From positions 1 through 64,000 of the IMG/VR virus record IMGVR_UViG_3300022744_000022: a DNA stretch of 64,000 nucleotides. The stretch is one strand, 5' to 3'. The notes under the pieces were generated by a model. The model saw nothing but the letters and a program-made list of their open reading frames with translations, had not been told where the DNA came from and searched no databases. Position numbers and translations under genes: made by a program. How positions within the stretch are numbered: position 1 is the stretch's first letter; each line of letters begins with the position of its first letter. This document shows, piece by piece, positions 62,547 through 62,975 of the stretch.

Positions 62547-62582
62547 TCACTTTCTCCTAATCAAATGTGGTTAGGGAGGTGT
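62547..62582 (+). promoter_or_regulatory. late-promoter-like motif TTCTCCTAAT forming the 5' arm of a hairpin that occludes the SD of the holin-like gene
   Basis: CTCC-TAATC pairs with GGTTA-G-GGAG, and CAC with GTG. Confidence 0.5.
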
Positions 62583-62585
62583 CGC

Positions 62586-62975
62586 ATGGACGGTATTGCG
62601 GAATTCATCAACACTAACGTACTCCCCCACTGGCCGTTCGTGGCTGCGATGGTGATCTTCATGATCATCGGCGAGGTCACGACGAAGAACATCTTCACGC
62701 GAGATGCGCACAAGACCAACAAGCCCGTGTGGCTGTTCTGGTGGGGCCGTAAGACTCTGGCGCTCCACCCAATCATCGCGGGTATGGTTCTCGGGCTCAT
62801 GTGGCGGAACCCCGAGGCAGGGGTGGATACGCTCGTGGAGTCCATGGCGTACTTTGCGATGGCGGGCGGCTTTTCAGTTTGGGCCTATGAATTTCTGAAA
62901 GGCATGGCCAAGAAGGAAGGGATCGACATCGATCTTCCTGGCGTTGACGACTCAACACCCCCTCCGGCGAACTGA
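62586..62975 (+). CDS. holin-like small membrane protein (3 hydrophobic segments, charged C-terminus)
   Basis: WPFVAAMVIFMIIG, LALHPIIAGMVLGLMW and AYFAMAGGFSVWAY, then KKEG...DD. GGAGG SD before ATG 62586. Confidence 0.6.
   Translation: MDGIAEFINTNVLPHWPFVAAMVIFMIIGEVTTKNIFTRDAHKTNKPVWLFWWGRKTLALHPIIAGMVLGLMWRNPEAGVDTLVESMAYFAMAGGFSVWAYEFLKGMAKKEGIDIDLPGVDDSTPPPAN

What the first reader, a model, noticed from the sequence alone, without database searches (positions are those of the whole stretch)
62547..62588. T4-lysozyme-style translational lock on the holin-like gene
Seen: the promoter-like motif TTCTCCTAAT is itself the 5' arm of a ~12-bp imperfect stem that pairs with GGTTAGGGAGGTG, containing the GGAGG SD. 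Established: T4 genes e, soc and I-TevI are silenced on read-through early transcripts by such hairpins and freed when a late promoter starts inside the stem. Inference: a timing device preventing premature lysis, and independent support for the motif being a late promoter.
Basis: partly seen in the sequence, partly recalled or inferred. Interest (0 to 1): 0.6.

Follow-up and report, generated by a model that had tools for sequence, protein, structure and literature searches.

The report
Ribosome-site hairpin before phage membrane gene
A real, evolutionarily conserved RNA hairpin hides the ribosome-binding site of a small holin-like membrane-protein gene in an uncultivated freshwater jumbo phage; its upstream arm is a conserved regulatory motif, which fits but does not prove a T4-lysozyme-style translational lock.

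Summary
Window 62548-62581 folds into a 14-bp imperfect stem in which CACTTTCTCCTAATCA pairs with TGTGGTTAGGGAGGTG. The GGAGG Shine-Dalgarno (62575-79) is fully paired, and an outer helix joins the upstream stop codon to the ATG (62586). Of 205 crude gene calls in the 208-kb phage record, this site has the most occluded ribosome-binding site.

Four relatives keep the same arrangement: the pyrimidine arm is nearly invariant, the purine arm changes but still pairs, and the loops are unrelated. Other relatives hide the same gene's ribosome site with different hairpins, and three have no motif.

The exact 10-mer is unique in the window. It belongs to a motif family, (T/A)-rich + CTC(C/T)(C)TA(A)T, that forms conserved islands upstream of two other structural genes in related jumbo phages. 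That suggests a real signal, possibly a late-class promoter.

No RNA data exist, so the start site is untested. The upstream ORF stops 4 nt before the stem, so ribosome-mediated translational coupling is a serious rival. Holin identity is only weakly supported.

Verdict: real feature, known kind of mechanism, interpretation partly supported.

The parts
62548..62563 (+). 5' arm of the hairpin (CACTTTCTCCTAATCA); contains the conserved pyrimidine motif CTTTCTCCTAAT (62550-62561)
   Evidence: the motif is conserved in L002, L006, L041, L043, L029, L046 and L049
62564..62567 (+). loop AAUG; holds an ATG (62565) in frame with the main start. This is not conserved in relatives
62568..62581 (+). 3' arm (TGTGGTTAGGGAGG); includes the Shine-Dalgarno GGAGG at 62575-62579
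62540..62545 (+). outer helix, 5' side; overlaps the TAG stop (62541-43) of the upstream ORF and pairs with 62584-62589 around the ATG
62586..62975 (+). gene for a 129-aa helical membrane protein ('holin-like'): 27 homologues, none named, no Pfam or PHROG hit
62001..62543 (+). upstream co-directional ORF (180 aa, function unknown), conserved in L002 (57% identity, E 7e-63); its stop lies 4 nt before the stem
61985..61991 (+). GGTGTAG signal 16 nt before ATG 62001; a member of the genome-wide signal class found at non-structural genes
62977..63552 (+). 191-aa protein: proline-rich N-terminus, one strong TM segment, soluble C-terminal domain. Always follows the holin-like gene in relatives
63564..64000 (+). 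start of a 213-aa signal-peptide protein (runs to 64205) that ends in ...GVSFAF; third member of the conserved triad
41537..41548 (+). second motif copy, TTTTCTCTTATG, about 46 nt before the start of the 41595 gene; a conserved island in 8 other jumbo-phage contigs
54516..54531 (+). third motif copy, AGAAACTCCCTATAAG, about 60 nt before ATG 54590 of the 1464-aa tail-fibre-like gene; an identical 13-nt island is present in G003
26351..26362 (+). motif-like TTTTCTCTTGTG before the baseplate gene block; not conserved at the syntenic place in G003

Best explanation
The 42-nt spacer between ORF 62001-62543 and the holin-like gene encodes a hairpin that sequesters the gene's Shine-Dalgarno sequence and start codon. 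This holds on any RNA that begins upstream of about 62548. The 5' arm is not just a complement of the SD. It is a copy of a conserved pyrimidine motif, (T/A)-rich + CTC(C/T)(C)TA(A)T, that also sits upstream of other structural genes in this jumbo-phage group. I take that motif to be a class-specific promoter or start signal. On this reading, RNAs that read through from upstream are poorly translated. In the window those come from the GGTGTAG-type unit of ORF62001; in relatives they come from the tail-fibre operon. RNAs that start at or just after the motif (expected about 62560-62570) lack the 5' arm and are translated. This works like T4 e, soc and I-TevI. What is shown: the hairpin, its rank, its conservation, the independent conservation of the motif, and the predicted opening. 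What is inferred: promoter function, start-site position, the translational effect, and any link to lysis timing.
For: Hairpin strength: -18.4 kcal/mol, z -2.74. SD pairing is 0.99, rank 1 of 205 gene calls. The same architecture occurs in L002 (G001), L006, L041 and L043, where the protein is 75-85% identical. In those loci the 5' arm ACTTT(T)CTCC(C)TA(A)T is nearly invariant, the 3' arms differ but still pair (GGUUAGGGAGG, GUAGUGGAGAGG, AUAGGGGAAGAGG, CAAGGGGGAGG, GGUGGGGGAGAGG), and the loops are unrelated. Z-scores reach -3.36 and -3.49. The window's extra A (TAAT) is matched by an extra U (UUA) in the 3' arm. SD pairing drops from 0.77-0.99 to 0.15-0.41 when the RNA starts at the motif's end. 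The motif is kept where it does not pair with the SD (L029, L046, L049) and where the neighbour differs: a terminase gene in L047 and a divergent gene in L048, which needs its own promoter. Motif islands are conserved upstream of the 41595-gene orthologues in 9 phages and upstream of the 1464-aa gene in G000 and G003. All 5 copies of TTTCTCYT in the genome are non-coding. In several motif-bearing leaders the SD hairpin's 5' arm starts 0-11 nt after the motif (L045, L029, L046, and L021-L023). No terminator or sigma-70 promoter is predicted at the site. Upstream ORF62001 carries the GGTGTAG signal typical of non-structural genes. The T4 precedent is described in PMC3014915.
Against: There is no transcript data. 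No RNA polymerase or sigma gene was found in the 44%-complete record. The motif is rare and resembles no known promoter. The window's version (CCTAAT) scores poorly against a matrix built from the 41537 orthologues. A pyrimidine-rich motif will pair with a nearby SD to some degree by composition alone. L049 and L044 lock the site with coding sequence, and L003/L050 and L042 have neither motif nor hairpin. The upstream stop codon lies 4 nt from the stem, so translation of ORF62001 should open it. In most relatives the upstream genes are late structural genes, which weakens the early-versus-late logic.
Confidence: 0.45

Rival explanations
1. Translational coupling or attenuation without an internal promoter. 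The gene is expressed only from the polycistronic RNA. The hairpin keeps free 30S subunits off the site, and ribosomes terminating at the upstream stop codon melt the stem and allow initiation. This sets a low, fixed ratio to the upstream gene.
For: The upstream stop is 4 nt before the inner stem and lies inside the outer helix. In L002, L029, L041, L043 and L045 the stop is 0-10 nt from the stem base. The spacers are short (37-56 nt). Occlusion of this gene's ribosome site by unrelated hairpins in L044, L045, L049 and L029 shows the selected trait is a hidden ribosome site, whatever the arm. MS2-type and operon coupling is established knowledge.
Against: It does not explain why the 5' arm is invariant while the 3' arm varies. 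It does not explain why the same motif is conserved at other genes where it does not pair with the SD. In L006 the stop is 17 nt before the inner stem. In L048 the neighbouring gene is divergent, so coupling is impossible there.
Confidence: 0.3
2. By-product. The pyrimidine motif is a functional signal (promoter, processing site or protein-binding site) and the strong SD is a normal SD. They pair only because CUCC is complementary to GGAG and they lie close together, and the pairing has no regulatory role.
For: Anti-SD-like sequences pair with an SD by definition. The motif at 41537 pairs with its SD in only 1-2 of 9 orthologues. The z-scores of L002 (-1.09) and L041 (-0.90) are unremarkable.
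Against: Pairing extends beyond the SD core into non-SD bases that differ between relatives yet stay complementary to the TA(A)T end of the motif. The site is the most occluded in the genome. Relatives without motif-SD pairing have evolved other occluding hairpins.
Confidence: 0.12
3. The hairpin is a 5'-proximal stabiliser or an RNA operator. On this view, transcription starts at the upstream edge of the motif, or a phage protein binds the conserved RNA arm. The stem then protects the mRNA or serves as a repressor site rather than discriminating between transcripts.
For: In L045 and L029 the hairpin lies immediately after the motif. 5' stem-loops that stabilise mRNA and RNA operators (T4 RegA, gp32) are established (PMC3014915).
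Against: A stabiliser does not need to bury the SD and the AUG. No candidate binding protein was identified. There is no evidence on the start site either way.
Confidence: 0.08

Closest known systems
T4 gene e (lysozyme), soc, 49 and I-TevI leader hairpins (Uzan & Miller 2010, PMC3014915)
   Same: The SD and/or AUG is buried in a helix on RNAs that start upstream. The DNA that encodes the 5' strand carries a short conserved motif. The structure is kept in close relatives. The gene is a lysis-type or dosage-sensitive gene that lies downstream of other transcription units.
   Different: The phage lineage is unrelated (freshwater jumbo phage, GC 59%). The motif (CTCYTAT type) is unrelated to TATAAATA. 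Promoter activity and start sites are unproven. An upstream ORF ends 4 nt before the stem. In most relatives the upstream genes are late rather than early.
Translational coupling through SD-masking hairpins (RNA phage MS2 coat/replicase/lysis genes; bacterial operons)
   Same: An intercistronic hairpin covers the downstream SD and begins within reach of a ribosome terminating on the upstream cistron.
   Different: Coupling does not predict an invariant 5' arm that also occurs as a conserved island at other, unpaired sites.
Lambda S / P22 gene 13 sdi stem-loop with dual starts
   Same: An RNA stem-loop at the translation initiation region of a holin gene. In the window an in-frame ATG (62565) sits in the loop, 7 codons upstream of the main start.
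   Different: The upstream in-frame start has no SD and is absent from relatives (L006, L041, L043), so the dual-start feature is not conserved.

Membership tests
T4 e/soc/I-TevI-type promoter-in-stem translational lock | SD and/or start codon sequestered in a stable helix on upstream-initiated RNA | tested here: met
   In silico only: (-18.4 kcal/mol; SD pairing 0.99; rank 1 of 205).
T4 e/soc/I-TevI-type promoter-in-stem translational lock | A promoter placed so that transcription starts inside or after the 5' arm | not testable with these tools
   No RNA runs hold the DNA. There is only indirect support: the 5' arm is a motif conserved independently of pairing and at other genes.
T4 e/soc/I-TevI-type promoter-in-stem translational lock | Transcription from upstream units reads through into the gene | tested here: inconclusive
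   There is a co-directional upstream ORF with its own GGTGTAG signal, and no terminator is predicted in the spacer. The transcripts themselves were not observed.
T4 e/soc/I-TevI-type promoter-in-stem translational lock | Long leaders translated much less than short leaders | not testable with these tools
   Only predicted: SD pairing 0.99 versus 0.29.
T4 e/soc/I-TevI-type promoter-in-stem translational lock | Structure conserved in relatives, with the motif in the 5' strand | tested here: met
   Met in 5 of 13 distinct loci (window, L002, L006, L041, L043). In L045 the motif's TATG is also in the stem. It is not met in L003/L050, L042 and L044.
Translational coupling by hairpin melting | Upstream cistron's stop codon within about 15 nt of the stem base | tested here: met
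   Window 4 nt, L002 0 nt, L041 8 nt, L029 0 nt, L045 7 nt, but L006 17 nt.
Translational coupling by hairpin melting | Downstream translation depends on upstream translation | not testable with these tools
   This needs reporter genetics.
Phage holin | Small membrane protein with TM helices and a charged C-terminal tail | tested here: met
   129 aa; hydrophobic 10-37 plus two weaker segments; the AF2 model is all-helical (pLDDT 80.7); the tail is KKEGIDIDLPGVDD.
Phage holin | Membership of a described holin family | tested here: not met
   No Pfam or PHROG hit. The nearest named Atlas clusters are Phage_holin_5 at 0.86, a lead only. BFVD top hits are annotated 'Holin' but at E 0.04-0.2 and TM 0.5-0.6.
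Phage holin | Genomic linkage to an endolysin | tested here: not met
   No lysozyme, amidase or SLT gene is adjacent. There is a sub-threshold Amidase_2 match at 138 kb and an SLT domain in a 602-aa protein at 9728-11536. The neighbours are a TM protein, a signal-peptide protein and AdoMet decarboxylase.
Lambda S-type dual-start (sdi) control | Two in-frame starts conserved, with a stem-loop choosing between them | tested here: not met
   The in-frame ATG 62565 is present in the window only and has no SD. It is absent in L006, L041 and L043.

The most novel reading that the evidence does not exclude
In this uncultivated jumbo-phage lineage the structural-gene start signal (CTCYTAT motif) may itself be an anti-Shine-Dalgarno sequence. 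When it is transcribed from upstream it would lock the next gene's ribosome site, and only RNAs born at that signal would be translated. That would be a systematic, multi-gene coupling of promoter choice to translation. The candidates are the holin-like gene, the AdoMetDC gene at 50435 and several orthologues of the 41595 gene. It would operate beside a second, GGTGTAG-N9-ATG class of leaderless or short-leader non-structural genes.
Probability: 0.12. Interest if true: 0.7.

Novelty: new member of a known kind. Interest (0 to 1): 0.4.

Why it matters
If the start-site prediction holds, this would be a T4-type promoter-in-stem translational lock in a lineage unrelated to T4 and with a different promoter motif. 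That would show the device is a convergent solution for keeping a membrane or lysis-type protein silent on read-through RNA. It would also give a first handle on the two expression signals of a large group of freshwater jumbo phages that has no cultured member: the CTCYTAT motif at structural genes and GGTGTAG-N9-ATG at non-structural genes. If coupling is the mechanism instead, the feature is an ordinary example of intercistronic control.

Tried and rejected
- Rfam and tRNA scans found nothing.
- The sigma-70 promoter and terminator scan found no promoter, and no terminator at the hairpin, so it is not an intrinsic terminator (there is no U tract).
- blastn against known phages gave no match.
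- The search of sequencing runs found only freshwater DNA runs and no RNA.
- RNA polymerase (PF00562, PF00940) and sigma (PF04542) searches of the record were negative. The record is only 44% complete, and the PF00940 control rang nowhere.
- A matrix built from the 41537 orthologues did not give a specific genome-wide scan, and the window's CCTAAT variant scores poorly.
- The 26351 copy is not conserved at the syntenic site in G003.
- MAFFT misaligned the five hairpins because of indels, so the count of structure pairs was not run and pairs were read from the individual folds instead.
- My recollection that ORF62001 resembles the N-terminal part of phage DNA methylases was not supported: no Pfam or PHROG hit and no similarity to the N6_N4_Mtase gene that sits upstream in L044.
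- The dual-start idea was rejected because it is not conserved.
- One search was a mistyped query and gave no result.
- Complex prediction and the large representative search were not needed.

Full report
**Setting**

The window is the first 64 kb of a 208,486-bp linear IMG/VR virus record. CheckV estimates it as about 44% complete, and its GC content is 58.7%. The only runs that hold the DNA are freshwater metagenomes, and none is RNA.

The window is mostly a plus-strand block of very large structural genes. These include a baseplate-wedge match at 28263-31742, a tail-fibre-like match at 54542-58936, and an SLT domain at 9728-11536. There is no similarity to catalogued phages at the DNA level.

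**The observation**

The sequence reads ...CGTCTAG GCTT CACTTTCTCCTAATCA AAUG TGTGGTTAGGGAGGTG TCGC ATG.

- As RNA, 62540-62595 folds at -18.4 kcal/mol. The z-score is -2.74, and 2 of 200 dinucleotide shuffles fold as well.
- The inner stem is 62548-62563 with 62568-62581: 14 pairs with two single-base bulges.
- Every base of the GGAGG Shine-Dalgarno (62575-79, 6 nt before ATG 62586) is paired.
- An outer helix pairs the upstream stop-codon region with the start codon.

I made crude gene calls for the whole record and computed SD pairing probabilities for each. This site ranks first of 205 at 0.99. The next values are 0.98 and 0.89.

The structural observation is therefore confirmed and is more than chance. 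The exact word TTCTCCTAAT, however, is unique in the window at up to one mismatch, with 1.5 expected by chance.

**Context**

The 715-bp 'gap' upstream is not empty.

- ORF 62001-62543 (180 aa) is 57% identical (E 7e-63) to an ORF at the same place in a related 116-kb contig. It is therefore a real gene.
- Its TAG stop lies at 62541-43, so the hairpin fills the whole 42-nt spacer.
- The ORF is preceded by GGTGTAG 16 nt before its ATG.
- Half of all GGTGTA hexamers in the genome (55 of 117) have a start codon 14-17 nt downstream. The figures are 31 of 82 in G001 and 43 of 119 in G003.
- The genes so marked encode an SNF2 helicase, an AAA ATPase, a dNMP kinase, a NUDIX protein and similar non-structural functions.

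Read-through RNA from a non-structural-class unit into the hairpin is therefore plausible in the window. No terminator is predicted in between.

**Relatives**

The 129-aa protein has 27 homologues, all unnamed. I obtained 13 distinct upstream regions.

The usual gene order is: 1444-aa tail-fibre-like gene, small 60-90-aa ORF, holin-like gene, about 190-aa TM protein, about 211-aa signal-peptide protein, AdoMet decarboxylase. Relative to this order, the window carries a 3.6-kb insertion (58940-62543).

Five loci share the same lock: the window, L002, L006, L041 and L043.

- The 5' arm ACTTT(T)CTCC(C)TA(A)T is almost invariant.
- The 3' arm varies but stays complementary, including bases outside the SD core.
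- The loops are unrelated in sequence and length.
- L006 and L043 have perfect 12-bp stems, with z-scores of -3.36 and -3.49.
- The window's extra A in TAAT is matched by an extra U opposite it.

Four loci keep the motif but bury the ribosome site in a different hairpin that starts at or just after the motif (L045, L029, L046) or that uses the first codons (L049). L047 lies after a terminase gene and L048 lies beside a divergent gene; both keep a CACCTAT or CACCTTAT version. L003/L050, L042 and L044 lack the motif, although L044 still has a strong hairpin over its ribosome site.

Two conclusions follow. First, a hidden ribosome site is a recurrent, independently re-evolved property of this gene. 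Second, the pyrimidine motif is conserved for a reason beyond pairing.

**The motif elsewhere**

- All five copies of TTTCTCYT in the genome are non-coding, although two look like SDs read from the opposite strand.
- GTTTTCTCTTATG at 41537 is an island of conservation upstream of the orthologous gene in eight other jumbo-phage contigs. The protein identity there is 65-84% and the flanks are diverged.
- AGAAACTCCCTAT at 54516 is identical in G003, upstream of the 1464-aa gene.
- In several of these leaders an SD-occluding hairpin begins 4-11 nt after the motif.
- The second most occluded SD in the genome belongs to an AdoMet-decarboxylase-like gene at 50435. Its 5' arm starts at a motif-like TTTTTATAG.

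This pattern fits a class-specific start signal for structural or late genes. It is not proof. No RNA polymerase or sigma gene was found in the fragment, and no 5' ends can be mapped.

**Mechanism**

The best-supported reading (confidence 0.45) is a T4 e-like device. Long RNAs carry the 5' arm and are locked. RNAs that begin at or after the motif lack the arm, and the predicted SD pairing falls from 0.77-0.99 to 0.15-0.41. The T4 precedent for genes e, soc, 49 and I-TevI, with the late promoter in the DNA that encodes the 5' strand, is described in PMC3014915.

The main rival (0.30) is plain translational coupling. The upstream stop is 4 nt from the stem, and 0-10 nt in most relatives, so terminating ribosomes should open it. 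This rival does not explain the asymmetric conservation of the arms or the motif at unpaired sites.

The by-product reading (0.12) and the stabiliser or operator reading (0.08) remain possible. The lock and coupling are not mutually exclusive.

**Holin identity**

The support is weak.

- There are no Pfam or PHROG hits.
- The nearest named language-model clusters are Phage_holin_5 at 0.86.
- The all-helical AF2 model (pLDDT 80.7) has BFVD top hits annotated 'Holin', but at E 0.04-0.2 and TM 0.5-0.6.
- No endolysin gene is adjacent.

The 'premature lysis' rationale is therefore an inference on an inference.

**Verdict**

The feature is real and conserved, and it is a new member of a known kind of control. 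The decisive test is 5'-end mapping together with long-versus-short leader reporters.

Noticed in passing
G000 beyond the window (e.g. 66456, 121288, 163056-, 163398); in the window 61985 and 53329: GGTGTA(G) sits 14-17 nt before a start codon at about 46-55 genes (half of all GGTGTA hexamers in the genome), without an SD. In several cases CTAGAGTTT lies about 20 nt further upstream. The marked genes are non-structural (SNF2 helicase, AAA, dNMP kinase, NUDIX, GH64). The pattern is conserved in G001 and G003. It looks like a -10-like promoter for leaderless or very short-leader mRNAs, or a non-SD initiation signal.
   Followed up: partly
window 50378-50447: This is the second most occluded SD in the genome (0.98). 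The AdoMet-decarboxylase-like gene 50435-50905 has a TTG start after GGGAGGG. The 5' arm of its 17-bp hairpin starts at TTTTTATAG (50383), right after the upstream stop. The G003 orthologue also pairs a TCTC tract with GGAG.
   Followed up: partly
window 53644-54531: A GIY-YIG homing-endonuclease gene with atypical codon usage is inserted just upstream of the tail-fibre-like gene. Its last codons and stop (AAC TCC CTA TAA) coincide with the conserved AGAAACTCCCTAT motif. GIY-YIG genes also sit next to the holin-like cluster in L006, L029, L042 and L045.
   Followed up: partly
window 58940-62543: A 3.6-kb segment is absent from most relatives, where the tail-fibre-like gene is followed directly by a small ORF and the holin-like gene. 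It carries three minus-strand genes: a MarR/wHTH-like protein with a tandem AAVPPPND repeat (60929-61870), a protein with a J-domain-like HPD motif (59835-60959) and a 218-aa ORF. It also carries plus-strand ORF62001.
   Followed up: partly
window 62565-62567: An ATG in the hairpin loop is in frame with the main start and would add MWLGRCR, a lambda-S-like dual-start look. It has no SD and is not conserved in relatives.
   Followed up: yes
window 62977-64000 and on to 64661: A conserved triad follows the lock: the small membrane protein, a 191-aa proline-rich TM-anchored protein, and a 213-aa signal-peptide protein ending in GVSFAF (like an outer-membrane barrel C-terminus). An AdoMet decarboxylase gene comes next. 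This may be an envelope-spanning set rather than a classical lysis cassette.
   Followed up: no
L021, L022, L023 (orthologues of window gene 41595): The SD GGAG(G) is buried in local hairpins (CTCCGAT/ATCGGAG, CCTCCGT/ACGGAGG, CTTCTCCGG/CCGGAGAAG) that begin 4-11 nt after the conserved TTCTTAT(G/A) motif.
   Followed up: partly
window 32539-33201 (minus strand): A 220-aa Cys-rich ORF with atypical composition lies in an otherwise 'non-coding' 697-bp gap between plus-strand structural genes. It may be another mobile endonuclease.
   Followed up: no
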